Source: Anthoceros angustus
Lineage: Eukaryota; Plantae; Anthocerotophyta
Length of the DNA stretch: 64,000 nucleotides
Assembly: GCA_010909165.1 (NCBI GenBank)
Contig: MU008187.1
Location: forward strand, 624,247 to 688,246
Reading direction: 5' to 3'
Of this stretch, positions 4,841 through 42,207 are shown piece by piece (the first letter of the stretch is position 1; the number at the start of each line of letters is the position of its first letter). The notes under the pieces were generated by a model. That model searched no databases, was not told the DNA's origin, and was given only the letters and a program-made list of their open reading frames with translations. The position numbers and the translations under genes were made by a program.

Positions 4841-7463
<2,623 letters not shown>

Positions 7464-7642
7464 GCCGAGCGCACCAATCAAAAAGACGTCTCGTGATTCT
7501 CAGACTGCTCCTCCTTCACCGGTCGAGCGCACAGAGAGAGCCGGGGTGAAACGCAGAGGGACCAACTCACAGATCTCGAATAAGTGTGGGGAAGTGAACA
7601 CAACCGGGAAAGACTGCTTCAACACCAACCCCACGCACTCTC

Positions 7643-7882
7643 TATATAGAAGAGGCTTTTCTGGGTCTCGGTAAATGCGGTCTCCTGCTGCTTCTAGCGA
7701 GATGCCACGTCAGCAGCCACAGACCACGTCACAGCGCAGGGGCGGACCAATGAGAGGCCGAGTTGGCGTGGCACGGTGGCAGCGACCAATGGGCGGCCTC
7801 GGCCACGCACTGCCACGCTGGCGCGGCCCGGTCCGAGCCAATGCGGTCGCCAGAAGGTGCTGGCCGCCGGGCATGCTATTTA
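7643..7882. promoter_or_regulatory. Bidirectional core promoter shared by BiP and GRP94
   Basis: TATATA at 7643-7648 (BiP side) and TATTTA at 7877-7882 (GRP94 side). Two UPRE TGACGTGG on the minus strand at 7705-7712 and 7724-7731. CCAAT at 7747, 7786 and 7838. Further CCACG at 7803 and 7813. Confidence 0.75.
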
Positions 7883-8020
7883 CCGGCGTCAGCCGGTCGG
7901 CGCGGGGACTACTGCTTCCCAGTTCCAGCTTTACATGCAACAACAGAACGCTGAGAGAGCCGTGGCAGGGGCCAAGATTGGGACCGGATTGGGCTGGATT
8001 TGCTTGTGGGCGCTGCAACC

Positions 8021-11000
8021 ATGAGGCGATCGGGGGCGGCTTGGCTGCTCTGCCTGCTTGTAGCCTTCGCGGTGTTGAATCATGACAGTGAGTGGCGCGC
8101 TTTGGCCTGTGTGGGCGGTCGTCAGCTTTGAGGGATCTTGTGGGCTGGTGGAGTGATCGATGCGCCTGCGGATTTCTGAGGGGGCGTTGCATGCAGAGTT
8201 GCCGATGACTCTTTGAGGGTCATGCGCGGGGGGTGTGATTGTTTTGTGGGTTGTGGGCGATGGAAGGAAGGACGGATCAGTCTTGGATCTTGGGTGTGGC
8301 GTTTTAGTCGTGCATGTAAAAGGGGATGGGAGGAGGGGTCTTGGTGGGGGAGGGAGCAAATTGGCGGTGTTTGGTGATGTGTTCTGGTGGGCATTGCGGA
8401 GGATGTCGGAATGCGGTGCATTGCAGGCTTGAATTGAGCTGGCATCGTTGATCCGTAGGCATGCATAGACCAGTTCCTGTTTGGAGTGCTGGGCTGTGAG
8501 AGGCTTGATGTCGTGTGAAATGGCGGCCTTCTATGCTACATGGCTGGTTTGTCGAGTTCTGCGGATCACGTGGTTTTGAGATCTGGGTCCCATGTTCTTG
8601 TCGGACAGTGGTTTTGAGTTCTGTTTTGGGGCACTATGCAGGTTGGCAGTCCCATGTGAAAGCAGAGGAGAGTGTCGATGCCGATTTGCGAGACGCACCT
8701 AAGATCGAGGAGAAGTTCGGCGCCGTCCCTCCCGGGCTGTCCACTGATTCCGAAGTCGTACAGAGGTGGTTAAGGCGCCTGGCTTTTCTATTCGGATGCT
8801 TTGTGGGGCAGAGGGACGGTTGCCCCTCTGCTCTCCCTGCTCGTTGTGAACGCTCGCTGAAGAGTTGTTGTCGGACTGTTGATACAGGGAAGCAGAGTCG
8901 ATCAGAACATTGAGGACTCATGGAGAGAAGTTTGAGTTTCAGGCTGAAGTGTCCAGGCTTATGGAAATTATTATCCACTCGCTGTACAGCAACAAGGACA
9001 TCTTTCTGCGAGAACTTATCTCGAACGCCTCAGATGTGAGTCCTTCGGGCGTGCACGTGTTGCAGTGATGTAGTTGTGTGGCATTGTACTGGGTTCAAGC
9101 GAGCTTGAACCTTGTTGGTTTGACCATGGCAGGCACTGGACAAGATCAGGTTCCTATCACTCACTGATAAGACCGTCCTTGGGGAGGGTGAGGACAGCAA
9201 GTTGGAGATTGAGGTACTGTATTCTTTTCCTTTCTTTCATGTTGTCAGCATGGATTGCTCAAAAGGAATAATGTTAATTTGCAAGGATGAGCTCCTGACA
9301 TCTATCTTGGGAACAGATCAAAGTGGACAAAGATCGAAAACTCCTGTCTATTCGGGACAGGGGTGTTGGCATGACAAAGGAGGACTTGGTTAAGAACCTT
9401 GGCACAATTGCCAGGTCGGGCACATCAGGTACTTGGGAGGTTTCTGAGGCATGGTGCCTCTGATGGTCGAATTTCTCCCTTGTCTCCTAACAGTAAGGAC
9501 TTTCCACATCTTAAATTTTGACTGCTTTTGTCAACTGGTTTGCAGCATTCCTTGAGCAGATGCAAAAAGGAGGTGATTTGAACCTGATCGGGCAGTTTGG
9601 AGTAGGATTTTATTCTGTCTACCTTGTCGCTGACTATGTCGAAGTGATCAGCAAGCACAATGATGACAAACAGTGAGTGGTGGAATTCAGATTCTCTGGT
9701 GAAGCAGATGGGAAAGTCTTGTGGAGTTGAGTGATGACTGCCCCATACTCTTCAGGCAAGTTGCTCACTGTAGTGTGCCCCAATGTCCATCGCAGGCACA
9801 TCTGGGAATCCAAAGCTGATGGAGCGTTTGTAGTCCTGGAGGATACTGAGAATGAGCCGCTCGGTCGGGGGACGGAGATAAGAATACACCTGAAGGATGA
9901 TGCCAGCGAGTACGCTCAAGAGGACAAACTTCGAGTAAGTTCTATGTCTGCTCTTGTCTGACTATTCTTGCATTAGAACTTGAAGTAGAGACAAGCCAAT
10001 TTCTCTCTCTGCACAATGTGATTCTCACCAGCCATTGACTACAGGAGCTAGTCAAGAAATACTCAGAGTTCATCAACTTCCCCATCCGTCTCTGGGCAAG
10101 CAAGGACATTGATGTGGAGGTGCCCGCAGATGAGGAATCTGAAGAAGTGGCCGAGGATGAAGAGCTGAAAGAGAGTAAGCTTTCATTTCTGAGGCTGAAT
10201 GTTTTGCTGCTTTGCACAGGAGCAGCCAAATGTTGCAATTTCAAGCAATCATGCAGAGAGCTTTGGACATGATTCTGACTTAGATTTCGTTTTAACCACG
10301 TTGCTGCAGCTGAGGAGACGGTTGAAGATGTGGAAGAAGATGGTGCTAGCGATAAGAGTGAGTAATCCATGTGTTTCCGCTGTCTCTGACCTGCGAGCCA
10401 ATGATGTGTTATCTCAAATCTGTTTGGAACATGTGTATCCAGAGCCCAAGACAAAGACTGTCAAGGAAACAAAGTGGGACTGGGAGGTCCTGAACGATGT
10501 GAAAGCTGTATGGCTGCGGAACCCTAAGGAGGTGTCTGAGGAGGAGTACTCCAAGTTCTACCATACTTTGGCCAAGGTAGTCCACTTTGCCGCTAGGTGT
10601 AGTTCTACCCTTGGTGATTTATTGTTTCCAACTTGCCAACAGTGCTCGACAGTTCTCTACCAGCTCCAAGAGCGTTGCTTTACGGTCCTTGTTGTCATGG
10701 CTGAGGACTTCCGTCTGTCAAGTAGCAGATCCAGAAGCTGACCAGTGGCATTTGGTGCTCAGGACTTCGGTGAGGACAAGCCTCTCGCTTGGTCACATTT
10801 CAGCGCTGAAGGTGATGTAGAATTCAAGGCAATCCTATACATTCCCCCCAAAGCGCCATATGATCTTTTTGAGAACTACTATAACACGAAGGCAACAATC
10901 AAGCTCTTCGTTCGGAGAGTTTTCATCACAGATGAATTTGATGAGCTGCTCCCCAAATATTTGAGCTTCATCAAGGTATATGAAGTGACGGGGGCTTTGT

Positions 11001-12807
11001 GGATCTCTGTTAGCAAACACTTTTGTGCGTGGGAAAACTTGCCTGGAAGCTGACTCACTAGATGCGTACTTCGTTGTTTGCAGGGAATAGTCGACTCGGA
11101 CACTTTGCCCTTGAATGTTTCACGAGAAATGTTGCAACAACACAGCGCTCTCAAGACCATTAAGAAGAAGCTTGTCCGAAAAGCTTTGGATATGATCCGC
11201 CGAATCTATGAAGAGGATCCTGATGAAGCCCACGAAGGCAAAACATCTGGTATGTACGTGGATTCAATCAAAGCAAGCCCTAAATGTCCAGGATTGTTCG
11301 AAGCGAAAGTGTGTATTGTGGAAGGTCGGGATTGTTCACCACCAGCTGTCAGTTGCTTTGCTCTGAATCTCCCCTGAATTGTTCAGATGAGGAAACGGCC
11401 GTGGAGAACTCTGAGAAGAAGGGGAAATACGTGAAGTTCTGGAATGAGTTCGGCAAAGCTATCAAGCTAGGAGTGATTGAAGATGCAGCCAATCGTGCTA
11501 GGTTGTCTAAGCTACTGAGATTTCACAGGTACAGTCACAGTCGAATCACCTTGTGGAGTCTGCATGTCAGCTGACATTGTATGCTAACGTGGCCTACCGT
11601 CATCCATGTGTGTATTGGCAGCTCCAAGTCAGGTGGCAACTTGACATCACTCGATCAGTATATTTCCCGAATGAAGGAAGGACAAAAGCAGATCTACTAC
11701 ATAACTGGTCAGAGCAAAGAAGAACTGGAGAACTCTCCGTTCTTGGAGAAGCTGCTCGCAAAGGGTTATGAGGTAGGAGCTTGTCTTGCTGTCATAGCCG
11801 GGTGCTTGTGTGCATGCGTTTGCAAATATATCCCAGCTATTCGAGTCCAGTCCTGCTTACTGACGCACCCCGCGGTTTATGCTTGTTCGTGCCACAGGTG
11901 ATCTACTTCGTGGACCCTATCGATGAGTACTTGATGCAGAACTTGTCTGAATATGAAGAGAAGAAGTTCCAGAATGTTTCCAAGGATGACCTCAAGATCG
12001 CTACCAAGGCGGAAAAGGCAAGGAACAAGCAGTTGAAGGAGTCGTTCAAGGATCTGACCAAGTGGTGGAAAGAGGCCGTTCCCGGAGACAGATTAGAGTC
12101 CGTGAAAGTGAGCAGTCGCCTTTCCGGCACTCCTGCTGTCGTAGTGACCTCCAAATTCGGATGGAGCGCAAACATGGAGCGCATCATGCAAGCCCAGACT
12201 CTGACAGATCCCAGCAAGCAAGGCTACATGCGAGGGAAGAGGATCCTGGAAATTAACCCTAGGCATCCTATTATCAAGGACCTGAGGGAGAGGGTGGCCA
12301 GCAACTCAGAGGTAAGCTTCGGCAGCCATGTCCGGTCTTTGTCTGTGCGACCTTGCATGTGATCGCTGCTGTACGTAACTCACATCGGGTCCGTGAATCT
12401 GTTGCAGGACGAGAGTGCTAAAGCCGTGGCAACCCTAATCTACGAAACCGCTCTGCTCCAGAGCGGTTTCATCCCAGACGACTCGAAGGACTTCGCAACT
12501 CGCATCTACTCTGTGATCAAGTCGAATTTGAACTTAAGCCCGGACGCGGACGTGGAGCCTGAGGAGGAGGTTACTGAGGAAGACGAGACCGCGGCAGAAG
12601 CAAAGGATTCCGACAAGGTACGCACCCACCTACCTACACACGGTGACCTTGGCCAGGTTGTTAGTTCCTGAAAGCATGGTGGTAACATTTTTTTCCTTTG
12701 GACAGGGAGGGGATCACGAACAGGACGCACATCCTGACGAGGAATTCGAGAGCTTTAATGCCCAGAATTTTGACGACTCGAGCTTCGACCTGAAAGACGA
12801 GTTGTAA
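8021..12807 (+). CDS. GRP94: Endoplasmin / GRP94 (ER HSP90, SHEPHERD ortholog), multi-exon
   Basis: Exon 1 [22 protein letters not shown] (ATG 8021, donor at 8088) splices to WQSHVKAEE...[11 protein letters not shown]. Further motifs [34 protein letters not shown] and LEINPRHP. Ends FDLKDEL* with TAA at 12805-12807. Confidence 0.98.
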
Positions 12808-30640: not shown

Positions 30641-32453
30641 CTCTTGAGTCTTGCTAGGGTTTATGTTTGAGCCAATTCAACCCTCAGAGACGGTCCTGTA
30701 ATGTGCTGAAATCTGCACGAAGCACAATTTTCATGACATATTTCCTTTTCCATAGGATGCAGGCACGTATGGCTTCATGGAATCTATGAGGATAGCTTGA
30801 ATGCAAGTTGTATTTGGCGATAACCATTTGGCATTTCCTTCCCACTTCGGATTCCCCGCATCCACATTCCTTCTTCACTCTTCCCACAGCCTCATGATTC
30901 CGGCACTTCTTCTCCACCGCAATACTCACTTCTTCTTCAAGACTCGCTCCTCACTCACCCTCCCCCTTCTCTTATCCTTAGCAATATCTTGCCATACTTG
31001 CTGGATCAAGTATGGGAAGAGATCAAACAAGCTTCCGTCTCAAGAACACGAGCAAGAGTCAAACAAGGGAGTCAGACAACGTGTTCCTGAACAGGTCGCA
31101 TCTCTTGAACATCTTGCTATCAGCATAGGATCCCTGGCATCTGCGATATCATCTTCAGCTTCCTGGGTGAAGTTCCGGGGTTGCAAAGACACGAATGTGA
31201 TCGGGAAGCACTGGAAGAATCACATGGGTGGTTGAGCTACGGTTGAGGATTTCAATGAGAGTACGTATCACATGGAGTGAGACATCGGGCAACGACATCC
31301 CTTCTTCTTAATTGGATTTGCTAAAAGTTAGACTACTTTGTGGGTGCTATCAATGGTATGGGGGCTAGGCATTTTCGTTCTCGTCACCTTCTCCGGATTC
31401 CCACTTTTTCACCAATATGCAATGAGGTTGCCTGAGGTATCACCAACCACGTGGACCACAGTGCTACATGTCATAAACCACCTTGCGGGTGCACGAACCG
31501 CCTCTCGGTAGACCAACCATTCACGGCGTGTATAAATCACCCAGTGGATGCATCAATCAAACACCAAACATACCAGCAGTATCATTAGATGCTTCCAATT
31601 TTCTTGAGCATTGAATTCGTTATAATTTAAAAAATATATTTTTAATTAAATGTTTTTGAGAAACAAAACGTGAATAAATAATATCAAGAAGAAAACCATG
31701 GCCAAAGGTTCAAAAAAGGAGAGTAGATGATACAAAATAACAAAAGATGCCAACTAAAGGCTGCCCGGATCAACAACCATCTAGCAGCCGGAAATTTTGT
31801 AAGTTTAGATACCATTAGAATACTATCATGTAAGTATTTTACGAAAATTCAAAATTTTTCATCTTCCAATACGCTTCTAACCATTATAAGAAGAGGTGCT
31901 TACCATCTTAAGGCCCCATTGAGCCTAAAGATAATAAACACCCTCCCCCCTTCCATAGGTTGTTCCTCTTTGTCTCTACCCCAAAAGTCTCCACGCCCAA
32001 ATACTAGATCAATTTCATTAAAAATGAAAGGAAAAATCAAATATAAATACTCGATCAATTTCACCGAAAAGAAAGGAACAAGGAAATTGAACGCCAAAAC
32101 ATGAGAGAGAAAAAACACATGATCTTTAGTGTCTCCCCCGCACTACCGCAAACCTAAGACATGATCTTTGTTGTCTCGCTCACAACAAGGGCCGCTGTCG
32201 GAAGGTTCTCCAAGTCCACGCCCTCTAAATTCCATGGAATGTAAATATTCAATAAATTTCATAAAGAAAAAAAGCAACAAGGAAATTGAATGCCAAAAAA
32301 TGCGAGAAAAATTATTTGATCTAGGTCCCATTGTTTTTGAGATTATGAGCCACAACCTTCAGAATCATAGGCGGCCCGACCACGTCAAAGTACCTCTCTA
32401 TAGGCTGCTTGCAAGGCGGACAAACACCTCCATCGCAACGACGCGCTGCAGCC

Positions 32454-32974: not shown

Positions 32975-35113
32975 ATGGCTGTCTGGAGTCCTGCAGTTGA
33001 GTCGCGCAAAGGGCATCGGCACCCGTGGTGGGGACCGTGTTTGTGGAACCAACAAGAAGGTGAGAATGTAGGAACAGCTCCCGCTCAGCTGACGTCAAGG
33101 AATCAACTTTCGGCAAACAACGAAGCCGCCAAGTGCAGCACCTTCGCAACAAACTCAGCCCGGCGTGGAGGATGTTTGGCTGGAGACGGATCTTCCAGCA
33201 AGGCTCGTGGCTTGGATGTGCAGCTGGGTGCTCTGGCTATGGAACGAACATCCAGCTGGGGCGTGTCTGCAGGATTCGAAACGGGCGTAACCCCTGGAAC
33301 GGTAAGCCAACTATGTGAGCAGGGGCAGCTGCGTGAGGCCGTTGAAGCGTTGGGATATTTGGTGCACACAGACACTCATGTTGCCAAACCGATTTTGTAT
33401 GCGGTCCTAAAAGAATGTGTGGCGAAGAACGATCTAAGTCTGGCACGGCGGTTTCATGCTCTGGCGGTGAAGAAGGGATATGATAGGGCGGATACGTTCT
33501 TGTGCAACCACATCCTGCGAATGTATGCTTCTCATGACAGGTTGCAAGAGGCCATGGATGTGTTCAACATGGTGGCCAAACCAGATGCCTTCACGTGGTC
33601 AGCCATAATTTCTGCACATGTTAAGCACGGGCAGGATAAGCAGGCGATGCAACTTTATCATCGGATGCGCATGTCCTATGTGAAGCCAGATGGGCATGTG
33701 TTTGTAGCAGCTCTGCAGGCTTGTGCGAGGGGAAGAGACTTGAAGTCTGGACAGGAGGTGCATGCTCATGTGTTGGCTAGTGGCGTTGAGCGTGATCAGT
33801 TTGTATGTTGCTGCTTGGTGGATATGTATGCAAAGTGTGGCAGCCTGGAAGACGCTGAAAGAGTGTTTGACGGGCTTTCTCGGAAGGATGTGGTGATGTG
33901 GAGTGCCATGATAGCAGGATATTCCCAGCTGGCCATGGGTGATAAGGCCCTTTGTCTTTATAGTGCTATGCAAGAAGAAGGCATGGCTGCACCCAATTCT
34001 GTGACATTTGTATGCCTCCTGCAGGCATGTGCAAGTGTGGGCACTCGGGCTTTGGAGAAGGGGAAGCAGCTTCATGCACAGGTTAGGGAACGGGGATTCC
34101 ATGCCGATGTTGTTGTAGGTGGGAGCCTGGTGAACATGTATGCAAAGTGCGGCAGCCTGAAGGATGCTCGAGTTGTGTTTGACGGACTTGGTCACAAAAA
34201 CGAGGTGACATGGACTGCCATGATTGCAGGGTATTCCCAGCAGGGCATGGGGCACGAAGCCCTTCGTCTTTACAGTGCTATGCAAGAAGAAGGCCTGGCT
34301 GCAGCGGATTCTGTGACTTTCGTTTGTCTCTTGCAGGCATGTGCAAATGTGGCAGCTTTGCATCTCGGGAGGCAGCTTCATGCAGAAATTAAAGAAAAAG
34401 GACTTCAAGCTGACTTGTTTGTCGCCAGCAGTTTGATAAACATGTATGCTAAGTCAGGGTGTATGGTTGATGCACAGGAGGTGTTTGACGCATTGCCCAA
34501 ACGAGACGACGTCACCTGGAATGCACTGATTGCTGGATATACCTTACAAGGAGAGAGTGAAAAGGTTTTTGACTTGGTTCAGAAAATGAGGCAGGATGGC
34601 GTCCAGCCAGCCGGCATTACTTTCCTTAGTTTACTTACAGTCTGCAGTCATACGGGTCTAGTGAAAACGGGACAATATTACTTTGAGGCTATGAATAGAC
34701 AATATAGGATAAGTCCCACAGTGGAGCACTACACATGCATGGTGGATCTCCTGGGTCGTGCAGGCCAGCTGGATGAGGCGTTAGCTCTGGTAAGGGCAAT
34801 GCCTGTTCTGCCTGATACTGCAGTCTGGAGCACTCTATTGGGTGCGTGTCGAAAGTGGGGCAATGTGGAGGTGGGACGGTATGCTTTCGATGAAGCAGTG
34901 AAGCTGGACAAGAAAGATGACTCAGCATATGTGTTGATGTCAAACATATATACTGGTGCCCAGATGTGGGAGCAAGCACAGGAGATGCAGGCCATGAGAC
35001 TAAGAATCAGGGCATGGAAGCAACCAGGCCAGAGCTGGTGGACAGACTTGTACGGACTGGTACACAGTTTTGTGGTTGATATAAGGAATATCGCGGAAGT
35101 GAATGAAGCGTGA
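32975..35113 (+). CDS. PLS-class PPR protein with E1/E2 and PG box but no DYW domain (organellar RNA-editing factor type); single exon; first in-frame ATG at 33239
   Basis: Repeated P-L-S triplets (LVDMYAKCGSLEDA.VFD...DVVMWSAMIAGY...NSVTFVCLLQACA). Ends EHYTCMVDLLGRAG, VWSTLLGAC, AYVLMSNIY, KQPGQSWW, then stops 23 residues later. Confidence 0.95.
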   Translation: MAVWSPAVESRKGHRHPWWGPCLWNQQEGENVGTAPAQLTSRNQLSANNEAAKCSTFATNSARRGGCLAGDGSSSKARGLDVQLGALAMERTSSWGVSAGFETGVTPGTVSQLCEQGQLREAVEALGYLVHTDTHVAKPILYAVLKECVAKNDLSLARRFHALAVKKGYDRADTFLCNHILRMYASHDRLQEAMDVFNMVAKPDAFTWSAIISAHVKHGQDKQAMQLYHRMRMSYVKPDGHVFVAALQACARGRDLKSGQEVHAHVLASGVERDQFVCCCLVDMYAKCGSLEDAERVFDGLSRKDVVMWSAMIAGYSQLAMGDKALCLYSAMQEEGMAAPNSVTFVCLLQACASVGTRALEKGKQLHAQVRERGFHADVVVGGSLVNMYAKCGSLKDARVVFDGLGHKNEVTWTAMIAGYSQQGMGHEALRLYSAMQEEGLAAADSVTFVCLLQACANVAALHLGRQLHAEIKEKGLQADLFVASSLINMYAKSGCMVDAQEVFDALPKRDDVTWNALIAGYTLQGESEKVFDLVQKMRQDGVQPAGITFLSLLTVCSHTGLVKTGQYYFEAMNRQYRISPTVEHYTCMVDLLGRAGQLDEALALVRAMPVLPDTAVWSTLLGACRKWGNVEVGRYAFDEAVKLDKKDDSAYVLMSNIYTGAQMWEQAQEMQAMRLRIRAWKQPGQSWWTDLYGLVHSFVVDIRNIAEVNEA

Positions 35114-39993: not shown

Positions 39994-42207
39994 TCACGAC
40001 CACTGGATCTCGTCATAGCGTTTAGGCTTTGTGGCGAGCTTTGTTCTGCAGATGGGACAAGCCTTGCCCAACTTTTTCCTACGAAAGAGATTCAATGCAC
40101 ATTCGTGGCAGACTCTGGCATGACCGCAGTCCACCATGTAGGCCCTGGGATGCTCCTCGTCAAATTCCTCCAGGCATACAGCACATTCAACCGACATTTC
40201 AGGCAGCTCGGGTGCTTCCTTCTTGGTCACCGCTCGAGCTCCTTCAGCCTGCTTCTTGAGAGTCTCCTCCTCCTCGAGCCACTTCTTCAGCACTTCCTCC
40301 TTCTCAGATCCGAACTCCTTCATGAGCTCCACTTCAGCCAGCTTATGCTGATCGACCAGCTGCATCTCCTCTTGACGGGCCTTTGCAAGCAACTCATCTT
40401 CCGCTCGACGAAGATTTGCCGCGAAATCCTGGGATTTGGCCCACATCTCCAGTTCCTTCTCGAACCGATTCTTCTGCGAGTCTTCCTCCAGCGCTTTCAC
40501 TTCCCCCTGCAGAGCGCTCACTTCAGTCTCCAAAACCTTGATCTCCTCGAGTCTCTTGATCTGCGCTTGCTGCAGCTGTGCCTCGTTCTCCAGCATTCTC
40601 TGCCTCATCTCATGCTCACGCTCCGCGCTCCTTGCTTTGAACAGGTTAAGCTGAGCGGTGAACTCGTCATCCAGCTCTGCCAGCTTCTTTGCAAACGCAG
40701 CTTCCAGTACTTCCCGTCTGTTCTTGAGGTGTTGCAGCTCTGCCTCCTCCCTTACCAGGAGATCAGCAACACGCATCTTCTCACATTGGTACTGCTTATG
40801 GCTCTCTGTTAAATTGGCAACAGCAAAACTTTCCTCCCGAATCTTGGCCCTATCTTGCTCTTGCGCCTGTTTCCTCCTTTTGGCATACACATTCACCTTC
40901 TCCTCCTTACTCTCCACTGACCAGCTCAGCAGGTGCCTCTGCGGGTCAATTTCCTCCATGTCCGCCGTCTTAGCGAAGTAGCCGAACACCTGATCAGCCA
41001 CCGGAAAGTCCTCCTCTATCCTCCTCCTCCTCTTCCGCGAGCGGGCCGACGATTCCGGACTCCCCGGATGCTTCCATCGCAGCCATTCTTCCCGTCCCTG
41101 CTTATGTGATGCAAGCTTGTCCGTCAAGTGCTTGGCATGAACATATCCAGCCTCCGAAGCAGGAAAGACCATGAGATGTCTGCAGACGCCAGGGACATGA
41201 ACTTGAAGAATGTTGTCATACTTCAGGTCCTGGAGATGATGCTGAAGCCGTTGCTCGATGTGAGGTGGCAGATCGGACTCCTGTCGGGTGTCGGCAATGA
41301 TAACCGTGGGAGGCCAGACGATGGAATCGTCAGGTTTCTCCGGATGCAACGTCCGTCCTCCTTCAATCTTGCCAGCCTGGCGTTCATGCACTCGAAGGGC
41401 CTCTAGAAGCGCTCTGTGGTATCCCCGATGCTGATGCTGCCTCTTCTTCTTGAACTTGTCGGCGTGGTTGATTAGAGCAGTCCATCCCTTGAAGCGCTGC
41501 GTTGTCGGACAGATGTGGCACACAGTTTGCTCCCGGTCTCCAATCACCCGAGGCTTCTCATCCCCGCACACTTCCCGGACGAATTTCTGGAGCCTCGGCA
41601 GCCACTGCTGGTACGCCCTCTCCTGAATTAAGCGCACTTTCTCGTCGTCTTCACTGTCGTACTCCTCCTCTTCCTCCTCCTCCTCCTCCTCCTCCTCCTC
41701 CTCTTCCTCCTCCTCCTCTTCCTCTACTTCCTCTCCCTCCTTCTCGACCTCGTGGATGCCATCGCGGCGACTGTCCTCCATTGGCACATCCGCTGGAGCC
41801 GGAGCCGGAGCCGGAGCCGCCATATCTGACTCTCGCTCAGCAATCGCCTTGTGCATTTCAGGTGCTGCATCAATTGGCCGGGGATCAGCCGACTTTGAAC
41901 GAGAGGAAGGGGAAATGCCATCCCGAGGCTGCAGATCCCTGTCTCGTTGCCCTTTCCGGTCCTGGTCCCGATCCCTGCTGGACTCATCTCTCACCCGGTA
42001 ATCCTTCTCACTGCCGTCATTGTGCTGCTTCTTGTGGTGATGCTGGTCCTTATGATGGTCTACCCGGTGGAGTTTGGAGGAGCTGTAGGGCTGGCAGCTG
42101 GCCCTGGGTGAGTGTGAAGGTCTGCGGGAACCACTAGAACTAGGCTTTCGCTCACTGCGCTTATCCTCCCCTTTGTTGCGCTTACCCCTGTCTGCAGAGA
42201 TTTCCAT
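39994..42207 (-). CDS. SGS3-like protein (zf-XS, XS, coiled coil) with a C-terminal RING-HC finger; uninterrupted 737-aa ORF
   Basis: zf-XS-like CHIC...WTALINHA...RQHQHR. XS domain IVWPPTVIIADT...FPASEAGYVHAKHL...REEW...QVFGYFAKTADM. About 200-aa coiled coil. RING CAVC-x15-CGH-x3-CHEC-x13-CPIC. Confidence 0.88.
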   Translation of the reverse strand: MEISADRGKRNKGEDKRSERKPSSSGSRRPSHSPRASCQPYSSSKLHRVDHHKDQHHHKKQHNDGSEKDYRVRDESSRDRDQDRKGQRDRDLQPRDGISPSSRSKSADPRPIDAAPEMHKAIAERESDMAAPAPAPAPADVPMEDSRRDGIHEVEKEGEEVEEEEEEEEEEEEEEEEEEEEEYDSEDDEKVRLIQERAYQQWLPRLQKFVREVCGDEKPRVIGDREQTVCHICPTTQRFKGWTALINHADKFKKKRQHQHRGYHRALLEALRVHERQAGKIEGGRTLHPEKPDDSIVWPPTVIIADTRQESDLPPHIEQRLQHHLQDLKYDNILQVHVPGVCRHLMVFPASEAGYVHAKHLTDKLASHKQGREEWLRWKHPGSPESSARSRKRRRRIEEDFPVADQVFGYFAKTADMEEIDPQRHLLSWSVESKEEKVNVYAKRRKQAQEQDRAKIREESFAVANLTESHKQYQCEKMRVADLLVREEAELQHLKNRREVLEAAFAKKLAELDDEFTAQLNLFKARSAEREHEMRQRMLENEAQLQQAQIKRLEEIKVLETEVSALQGEVKALEEDSQKNRFEKELEMWAKSQDFAANLRRAEDELLAKARQEEMQLVDQHKLAEVELMKEFGSEKEEVLKKWLEEEETLKKQAEGARAVTKKEAPELPEMSVECAVCLEEFDEEHPRAYMVDCGHARVCHECALNLFRRKKLGKACPICRTKLATKPKRYDEIQWS
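41662..41724 (-). repeat. (GAG/GAA)21 coding microsatellite giving poly-Glu21
   Basis: 63 nt of ctc/ttc triplets on the plus strand. Confidence 0.95.

What the first reader, a model, noticed from the sequence alone, without database searches (positions are those of the whole stretch)
7464..8020. BiP and GRP94 transcribed head-to-head from one ~230-bp UPRE-containing promoter
Seen: only 557 nt separate the two ATGs, and only about 228 nt lie between the divergent TATA-like boxes (7643-7648, 7877-7882). That core holds two exact TGACGTGG copies, three CCAAT boxes and extra CCACG motifs. Known: TGACGTG(G/A) is the UPRE bound by bZIP60/XBP1-type factors; BiP and GRP94 are cooperating UPR-induced ER chaperones and are unlinked in Arabidopsis. 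Inference: a bidirectional UPR module enforcing co-expression. From memory, unverified, Chlamydomonas BIP and HSP90B genes are adjacent, which would make this an ancient green-lineage linkage lost in angiosperms.
Basis: partly seen in the sequence, partly recalled or inferred. Interest (0 to 1): 0.72.

Follow-up and report, generated by a model that had tools for sequence, protein, structure and literature searches.

The report
Ancient head-to-head BiP–GRP94 gene pair
The genes for the two main protein-folding helpers of the endoplasmic reticulum, BiP and GRP94, are transcribed back-to-back from one short stress-type promoter region in this hornwort-like plant, and I find the same pairing in green algae, liverworts, peat moss and a fern, so it probably dates from the common ancestor of green plants.

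Summary
An intact BiP gene (minus strand, 7 exons, ends HEEL) and an intact GRP94/HSP90B gene (plus strand, 17 exons, ends KDEL) start 557 nt apart. Spliced RNA contigs show both are transcribed outward and leave at most about 400 nt untranscribed. The roughly 230-nt core holds two exact TGACGTGG sites 19 nt apart (P about 3e-5), three same-strand CCAAT boxes (P about 6e-4) and extra CCACG motifs. It has no canonical ERSE-I, ERSE-II or plant ERSE.

The same BiP(-)/GRP94(+) head-to-head pair occurs in Volvox (340-nt spacer), Pycnococcus (1261), Riccia (1172), Sphagnum (1539) and Adiantum (about 8.9 kb). Chlamydomonas has adjacent locus numbers. No flanking gene is shared, and no sequence word is shared by the spacers.

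The pair was not seen within 10 kb in Physcomitrium, Amborella, Cryptomeria or Chara, and the genes are unlinked in Arabidopsis. So it has been lost repeatedly, not only in angiosperms.

UPR control through the TGACGTGG pair, and its acting on both genes, remain inference. It is a new member of a known kind: conserved divergent chaperone pairs such as HSP60/HSP10.

The parts
4841..7463 (-). BiP (ER-lumenal HSP70) coding region. Seven exons: 7415-7463, 7061-7325, 6760-6974, 6419-6661, 5832-6311, 5463-5700, 4841-5339. 662 aa, hydrophobic N-terminus, ends HEEL.
   Evidence: Splice joints in RNA contigs, refined to GT..AG with an open frame. DnaK family hits per exon. 81-98% exon identity to the BiP genes of Sphagnum and Riccia.
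7464..7534 (-). BiP 5' UTR, the part covered by RNA contigs. In the relatives the contigs run 46-99 nt further, so the start site is probably near 7615.
   Evidence: X2 and X9 contigs lie up to 7534 with loose ends beyond it that resemble the window with indels. The start-site position is inferred from the TATA box.
7643..7648 (-). TATATA box facing BiP
   Evidence: Sequence. Its position fits the RNA 5' extent.
7705..7712 (-). UPRE-type site 1, TGACGTGG (CCACGTCA on the plus strand)
   Evidence: Exact match. Part of a 17-nt tandem repeat, 76% identical, with a 19-nt period.
7724..7731 (-). UPRE-type site 2, TGACGTGG
   Evidence: Exact match. P(>=2 in the core) = 3e-5.
7747..7751 (+). CCAAT box 1 (GACCAATGAGAGGCC repeat)
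7767..7771 (-). CCACG half-site (TGCCACG on the minus strand)
7786..7807 (+). CCAAT box 2 followed after 12 nt by CCACG. ERSE-like, but the spacing is wrong for ERSE-I.
7811..7817 (+). TGCCACG site
7838..7842 (+). CCAAT box 3, 35 nt upstream of the TATTTA box
7877..7882 (+). TATTTA box facing GRP94
   Evidence: Sequence. The relative's RNA contig begins about 44 nt downstream.
7936..8020 (+). GRP94 5' UTR, the part covered by an RNA contig of a close relative. Ten further loose letters suggest a start near 7926 or a little upstream.
   Evidence: X2 record 6
8021..12807 (+). GRP94/HSP90B (endoplasmin) coding region. 17 exons, 814 aa, signal-peptide-like N-terminus, ends KDEL. The first intron, 8088-8641, is 554 nt; the others are 93-186 nt.
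   Evidence: Ten introns supported by RNA joints; the rest modelled against Sphagnum GRP94 with an open frame. HtpG family hits. The tree places it among embryophyte GRP94.

Best explanation
The 557-nt spacer is a compact divergent promoter region for the two main ER-lumenal chaperone genes of a hornwort-like land plant. BiP is transcribed leftward from about 7615 and GRP94 rightward from about 7910-7926, so the two start sites are only about 300 nt apart.

Between them lie two UPRE-type bZIP sites (TGACGTGG, the core of the plant pUPRE), three CCAAT boxes of the kind bound by NF-Y, and several CCACG half-sites. The most likely mechanism is that the ER-stress bZIP factors bind here and raise transcription of both genes together. 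These factors are the bZIP60 type, produced by IRE1 splicing, and the bZIP28 type acting with NF-Y.

The arrangement itself is inherited from the common ancestor of green plants and has been kept in many lineages, while the cis-sequences have turned over.

Shown: gene identity and integrity, divergent transcription, motif enrichment, and the phylogenetic spread of the pair. Inferred: the start sites, factor binding, ER-stress induction, and action of the elements on both genes.
For: Genes and spacer.

Divergent transcription: spliced contigs of the same organism (100% identical) and of two relatives cover both genes and bound the untranscribed gap to 7535-7935. GC skew changes sign at the spacer.

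Motif enrichment:
- Two of the three TGACGTGG copies in 64 kb lie 19 nt apart here, P = 3e-5.
- Three same-strand CCAAT boxes, P = 6e-4.
- CCACG x5, P = 0.003, and TGCCACG x3, P = 1e-4.
- The sites lie in short local duplications.

Motif meaning: UPRE is TGACGTGG/A, pUPRE is ATTGGTCCACGTCATC, and NF-Y binds the CCAAT of ERSE (PMC3645738).

Relative's DNA: a DNA-type contig of a 90-95% relative aligns over 7673-7792, which holds the UPRE/CCAAT core, at 92.5% identity. The adjacent 138 nt do not reach 90%.

Ancient pairing, BiP(-)/GRP94(+) head-to-head with HDEL/HEEL and KDEL tails:
- Volvox reticuliferus, 340-nt spacer.
- Pycnococcus provasolii, 1261 nt.
- Riccia sorocarpa, 1172 nt.
- Sphagnum tenellum, 1539 nt, with a canonical ERSE-I in the spacer.
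- Adiantum capillus-veneris, about 8.9 kb.
- Chlamydomonas has adjacent locus numbers.

No other flanking gene is shared between the window and these loci, so the pair is retained specifically. The IRE1-bZIP60 pathway is documented from Chlamydomonas to liverworts (PMC11077094).
Against: - No canonical ERSE-I, ERSE-II or plant ERSE is present in the window's spacer.
- The layout is asymmetric. The UPRE pair lies 57-88 nt from the BiP TATA but about 150-170 nt from the GRP94 TATA-like box, and all three CCAAT boxes face GRP94. The region could therefore be two adjacent one-way promoters.
- TGACGTGG is absent from the Volvox, Pycnococcus and Sphagnum spacers. Riccia has only one TGACGTG. No 7-8-mer is shared by the five spacers beyond shuffled expectation.
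- TGACGTGG is also a generic C-box/G-box hybrid that other plant bZIPs can bind.
- There are no ER-stress expression data, start-site mapping or binding data for this organism.
- The pair is missing within 10 kb in Physcomitrium, Amborella, Cryptomeria and Chara, so it is dispensable.
Confidence: 0.68

Rival explanations
1. Two independent one-way promoters merely abut. The TGACGTGG pair drives BiP only, and the CCAAT/CCACG cluster drives GRP94 only. The pair has persisted because any breakpoint in so short a spacer would damage an essential gene, which is neutral entanglement, not selection for co-expression.
For: The element layout is asymmetric. Cis-sequences are not conserved between lineages while the arrangement is. 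Spacers range from 340 nt to about 8.9 kb, and the pair has been lost in several lineages without obvious harm.
Against: Longer spacers of 1.2-1.5 kb, and 8.9 kb in the fern, offer ample room for breakpoints, yet the pair survived. No flanking synteny survived around it, which argues for specific retention. Start sites about 300 nt apart put every element within the usual range of both promoters.
Confidence: 0.24
2. The ACGT-core sites are general bZIP elements (ABRE, G-box/C-box hybrid, HY5, ABF or TGA type) that serve light, ABA or developmental control. They are not UPR elements.
For: GCTGACGTGGC contains the ABRE-like core ACGTGGC, and TGACG is the TGA-factor half-site (sequence; general knowledge of plant bZIP sites). 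No composite ERSE is present.
Against: The exact 8-mer equals the UPRE consensus and the core of the Arabidopsis pUPRE. It is duplicated and accompanied by CCAAT and CCACG enrichment, between the two classic UPR target genes. The only other copy in 64 kb lies in front of an unrelated PPR gene.
Confidence: 0.06
3. The adjacency is a coincidence or an assembly artefact of this genome, and the similar arrangements elsewhere arose independently.
For: None found. Only one assembly of this organism was read.
Against: A DNA-type contig of a related species spans BiP exon 4 through the spacer core. The same orientation with orthologous genes occurs in five other fetched genomes from independent projects.
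Confidence: 0.02

Closest known systems
HSPD1/HSPE1 (HSP60/HSP10) head-to-head pair with a shared bidirectional stress promoter in mammals
   Same: Two cooperating chaperone genes of one compartment are transcribed divergently from a short shared region. That region carries compartment-specific unfolded-protein-response elements (mitochondrial UPR; see PMC1964532, listed), and the pair is conserved over long evolutionary distances.
   Different: The compartment (mitochondrion against ER), the protein families and the transcription factors (CHOP-C/EBP against bZIP60/bZIP28/NF-Y) all differ. For HSP60/HSP10 bidirectional activity has been shown experimentally; here it is inferred.
Arabidopsis BiP3 promoter pUPRE (ATTGGTCCACGTCATC) and mammalian UPRE/ERSE elements
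   Same: The core CCACGTCA/TGACGTGG is identical, occurs close to the TATA box of a BiP gene, and is accompanied by CCAAT (NF-Y) and CCACG sites.
   Different: In the pUPRE, ATTGG abuts CCACG at a spacing of 1 nt. Here the nearest CCAAT is 15 nt away and in the other relative orientation, and no ERSE-I, ERSE-II or pERSE spacing is met. The Arabidopsis element drives a single gene, and GRP94 (AT4G24190) lies on another chromosome.
Chlamydomonas reinhardtii BIP1 / HSP90B neighbours (Cre02.g080700 / Cre02.g080650)
   Same: The same two orthologous genes are next to each other. Volvox, in the same order, shows the head-to-head layout with a 340-nt ATG-to-ATG spacer.
   Different: I could not read the Chlamydomonas locus itself, so its orientation is inferred from Volvox. 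The volvocine spacer has no TGACGTGG or CCAAT. The Chlamydomonas UPR factor is bZIP1, whose binding site is not known to me.

Membership tests
BiP (ER-lumenal HSP70) | HSP70/DnaK ATPase and substrate-binding domains | tested here: met
   Exons hit DnaK models at E 1e-27 to 1e-51. The 662-aa frame is open.
BiP (ER-lumenal HSP70) | C-terminal ER retrieval signal (HDEL/KDEL type) and N-terminal signal peptide | tested here: met
   It ends HEEL, as does the Sphagnum BiP next to GRP94; Riccia, Volvox and Pycnococcus end HDEL. The hydrophobic N-terminus [17 protein letters not shown] was read by eye; no signal-peptide predictor was run.
BiP (ER-lumenal HSP70) | Orthology to known plant BiP rather than cytosolic HSP70 | tested here: met
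   81-98% identity per exon to the HDEL/HEEL-tailed neighbours of GRP94 in Sphagnum and Riccia. No HSP70 tree was built.
GRP94 / HSP90B / endoplasmin (plant SHEPHERD) | HSP90 domains, signal peptide, C-terminal KDEL | tested here: met
   HtpG hits. The 814-aa model ends KDEL and has a hydrophobic N-terminus.
GRP94 / HSP90B / endoplasmin (plant SHEPHERD) | Falls inside the endoplasmin clade of plants | tested here: met
   In the maximum-likelihood tree it lies inside embryophyte endoplasmins (100/98). It is outside liverworts, mosses and vascular plants, and 75% identical to Sphagnum.
Bidirectional (divergent) promoter gene pair | Head-to-head orientation with start sites less than 1 kb apart and no gene between | tested here: met
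   557 nt between the ATGs. RNA contigs leave at most 7535-7935 untranscribed. There is no Rfam hit in the spacer.
Bidirectional (divergent) promoter gene pair | Shared elements act on both genes; the genes are co-expressed | not testable with these tools
   Only contigs were available, and the tool states that their depths cannot rank genes. Both genes are represented in all three RNA-type runs.
UPR-responsive promoter (UPRE/ERSE class) | UPRE consensus TGACGTG(G/A) | tested here: met
   Two exact copies; P = 3e-5.
UPR-responsive promoter (UPRE/ERSE class) | [quoted passage not shown] | tested here: not met
   None is present. The closest is CCAAT-N12-CCACG at 7786-7807. The Sphagnum spacer does hold a canonical ERSE-I.
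UPR-responsive promoter (UPRE/ERSE class) | Induction by ER stress and binding by bZIP60/bZIP28/NF-Y | not testable with these tools
   No stress RNA-seq or binding data were reachable. An earlier scan note reports a bZIP60 gene with an IRE1-type intron elsewhere in this genome (s1-636895); I did not check it.

The most novel reading that the evidence does not exclude
The BiP-GRP94 divergent pair is one of the oldest surviving gene neighbourhoods of the green lineage, kept since before chlorophytes and streptophytes split. On this reading, selection preserves it for balanced, jointly inducible production of the two ER chaperones. Its independent break-up in seed plants and in Physcomitrium then marks a shift to separately regulated, multi-copy BiP families. 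It may even predate green plants; no outgroup was tested.
Probability: 0.35. Interest if true: 0.7.

Novelty: new member of a known kind. Interest (0 to 1): 0.6.

Why it matters
Gene order is almost completely scrambled between green algae and land plants, so a two-gene unit that survives in the same orientation across both is rare. It points to a functional constraint, most plausibly coupled dosage or coupled stress induction of the two ER chaperones that hand clients to one another.

It also gives a natural experiment. Lineages with the pair include hornworts, liverworts, Sphagnum, a fern, and volvocine and prasinophyte algae. Lineages without it include Physcomitrium and Arabidopsis. BiP:GRP94 co-regulation can be compared between the two groups.

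The 228-nt hornwort core is a very small candidate bidirectional ER-stress promoter. It could be tested, and possibly used as a tool, in transformable bryophytes.

Tried and rejected
- **Literature.** Searches for a published description of a BiP/GRP94 or BIP1/HSP90B head-to-head pair or bidirectional promoter found none. The only trace was the adjacent Chlamydomonas locus numbers in a proteomics table. The Schroda 2004 chaperone review and the Marchantia IRE1 paper (PMC9592932) are not held, so prior mention there cannot be excluded.
- **Shared cis-words.** A search for words shared by the five spacers gave nothing beyond shuffled expectation.
- **Flanking synteny.** tblastx between the window and the fetched loci gave no hits.
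- **Third TGACGTGG (32380).** It lies about 600 nt upstream of a PPR gene and looks like chance.
- **Rfam scan** of the spacer and first intron found nothing.
- **Lycophyte and Ceratopteris look-ups** failed; the proteins are not on record.
- **Chara, Amborella and Cryptomeria** show no BiP within 10 kb. With large genomes and a 10-kb limit this is weak evidence of absence.
- **UPRE conservation in the relative.** The read laying difference table was cut off before the spacer. I therefore cannot say whether the two TGACGTGG sites themselves are conserved in the 90-95% relative.
- **Joined spliced proteins.** Database searches were done exon by exon, by reference. The joined models were built only inside scripts, for frame checks, identity and the tree. 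No database search with a joined model was made.

Full report
**What is in the sequence**

The minus strand from 7463 down to 4841 carries a seven-exon gene. Its exons hit DnaK/HSP70 models. Spliced at GT..AG sites that match joints in RNA contigs, it gives an open 662-aa frame with a hydrophobic N-terminus and the tail HEEL.

The plus strand from 8021 to 12807 carries a 17-exon HSP90 gene. Ten of its introns are seen as joints in RNA contigs. The rest were modelled against Sphagnum endoplasmin. The result is an open 814-aa frame with a signal-peptide-like start and the tail KDEL.

These are BiP and GRP94/HSP90B.

**Transcription**

One run (X1) matches the window at 100% and is spliced, so it is RNA of the same organism. 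Two runs from relatives (X2 and X9, 95-99% identical) are also spliced.

- On the BiP side, the relatives' contigs lie up to 7534 and continue for 46-99 letters that resemble the window with indels. This puts the 5' end close to where a start site is expected about 30 nt downstream of TATATA (7643-7648).
- On the GRP94 side, a relative's contig begins at 7936 with ten more loose letters. That is about 44 nt downstream of TATTTA (7877-7882).

The untranscribed gap is therefore at most 7535-7935. The two start sites are probably about 300 nt apart; this figure is an inference, since contigs cannot show true ends. GC skew flips from -0.15 to +0.25 across the spacer, as expected for divergent transcription. 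Nothing in Rfam matches the spacer.

**Motifs**

TGACGTGG occurs three times in the 64 kb. Two of those copies lie 19 nt apart at 7705-7712 and 7724-7731, inside a 17-nt tandem duplication.

Simulations with the core's own dinucleotide make-up give the following:

| Motif in the 228-nt core | Observed | P |
|---|---|---|
| TGACGTGG | 2 | 3e-5 |
| CCAAT, same strand | 3 | 6e-4 |
| CCACG | 5 | 0.003 |
| TGCCACG | 3 | 1e-4 |

TGACGTGG/A is the UPRE. Its complement CCACGTCA is the core of the Arabidopsis pUPRE. NF-Y binds the CCAAT of ERSE elements (PMC3645738).

None of the composite elements is present, however. ERSE-I, ERSE-II and plant ERSE are all absent, and the nearest is CCAAT-N12-CCACG at 7786-7807.

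The layout is also asymmetric. The UPRE pair is adjacent to the BiP TATA. The three CCAAT boxes all face GRP94, the last one 35 nt from its TATA-like box.

**Relatives and ancestry**

I searched with one GRP94 exon by reference, took a full-length hit, and used it to collect named endoplasmins. I then looked at their genomic neighbours within 10 kb. Called gene ranges turned out to run from ATG to stop.

| Species (group) | Result |
|---|---|
| Volvox reticuliferus (chlorophyte) | BiP(-)/GRP94(+), 340-nt spacer |
| Pycnococcus provasolii (prasinophyte) | same pair, 1261 nt |
| Riccia sorocarpa (liverwort) | same pair, 1172 nt |
| Sphagnum tenellum (peat moss) | same pair, 1539 nt |
| Adiantum capillus-veneris (fern) | same orientation, about 8.9 kb; gene table only, no DNA |
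| Chlamydomonas reinhardtii | adjacent locus numbers for ER Hsp70 and HSP90B |
| Physcomitrium patens (moss) | upstream neighbour is a metallo-beta-lactamase-fold gene; no BiP exons |
| Amborella (angiosperm) | no BiP within 10 kb |
| Cryptomeria (conifer) | no BiP within 10 kb |
| Chara (streptophyte alga) | no BiP within 10 kb |
| Arabidopsis | genes on different chromosomes |

In the four species with DNA in hand, a BiP with an HDEL or HEEL tail lies upstream of GRP94 on the opposite strand. Where the pair occurs, the BiP neighbours are 53-98% identical to the window's BiP, exon by exon.

A DNA-type contig of a 90-95% relative of the window organism spans from BiP exon 4 into the spacer core. 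The arrangement is therefore also present in that species.

The three negatives in large genomes (Amborella, Cryptomeria, Chara) are weak, because the flank limit was 10 kb.

No gene flanking the pair in the window has a counterpart in any fetched locus, so the pair alone is retained. The simplest history is a head-to-head pair in the ancestor of green plants, followed by several later losses.

**What is not conserved**

The spacers share no 7- or 8-mer beyond shuffled expectation. TGACGTGG is specific to the hornwort-like spacer among those read. Sphagnum instead has a canonical ERSE-I, Riccia has one TGACGTG, and Volvox has neither. The arrangement is old, while the elements have turned over.

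**Organism**

The window's GRP94 sits inside embryophytes but outside liverworts, mosses and vascular plants. Its best identity to anything retrieved is 75%. Introns are about 90-190 nt. Earlier notes of this scan call the genome a probable hornwort. My tree is consistent with that but does not prove it.

**Mechanism and rivals**

I favour a shared ER-stress module (0.68). On this reading, bZIP60- or bZIP28-type factors with NF-Y bind the core and induce both genes.

The main rival (0.24) is two abutting promoters kept together by inertia. The asymmetric layout and the sequence turnover fit it. The survival of the pair across kilobase-scale spacers, with no surrounding synteny, argues against it.

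A generic bZIP-element reading (0.06) and coincidence or artefact (0.02) are unlikely.

Decisive tests are a dual reporter with site mutations, ER-stress RNA-seq in species with and without the pair, start-site mapping, and a synteny survey without a distance limit that includes outgroups.

**Novelty**

Divergent chaperone pairs with a shared stress promoter are known, HSP60/HSP10 being the example. I found no paper describing BiP-GRP94 as such a pair or noting its conservation. Some relevant reviews are not held, so an earlier mention cannot be ruled out.

Database searches used single exons by reference. Joined spliced models were used only inside scripts, and no database search was made with them.

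Noticed in passing
L009:1021-7427 and L004:24731-25611: In Physcomitrium the gene upstream of GRP94, where BiP sits elsewhere, is a 1055-aa metallo-beta-lactamase-fold protein (tRNase Z-like). In Riccia a Lactamase_B_2 gene lies about 9 kb downstream of GRP94. This may be a trace of the rearrangement that split the pair in the moss.
   Followed up: no
window 8088-8641: The first intron of GRP94 is 554 nt, while all other introns of both genes are 86-186 nt. The same-organism run holds a low-depth unspliced contig inside it (8126-8322). It could be retained pre-mRNA, or the intron may carry something such as an enhancer.
   Followed up: partly
window 32380-32387: The only other TGACGTGG in the window lies about 600 nt upstream of a 712-aa single-exon PPR gene (32975-35113). 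It has no obvious ER link and is probably chance.
   Followed up: partly
window 4841-4855; L005:4757-4846: BiP ends in HEEL instead of HDEL both here and in Sphagnum tenellum. Riccia, Volvox and Pycnococcus have HDEL. This retrieval-signal variant is shared by two bryophyte lineages.
   Followed up: no
window 7605-7620 and 7903-7918: A 16-nt direct repeat (CGGGAAAGACTGCTTC / CGGGGACTACTGCTTC, 81% identical) lies at both predicted start-site positions. It is in the same absolute orientation at both, so it reads differently for the two genes. Possibly chance.
   Followed up: no
L008:6640-8739: The Pycnococcus BiP as annotated (640 aa) starts MADDSDSD without a signal peptide. A weak match to the window's exon 2 extends to 8748, beyond the called start, so the first exon is probably mis-called and the true spacer differs from 1261 nt.
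   Followed up: no
window 39994-42207: Another first-reader note on this window reports an SGS3-like protein fused to a RING domain (s1-300259). I did not look at it.
   Followed up: no
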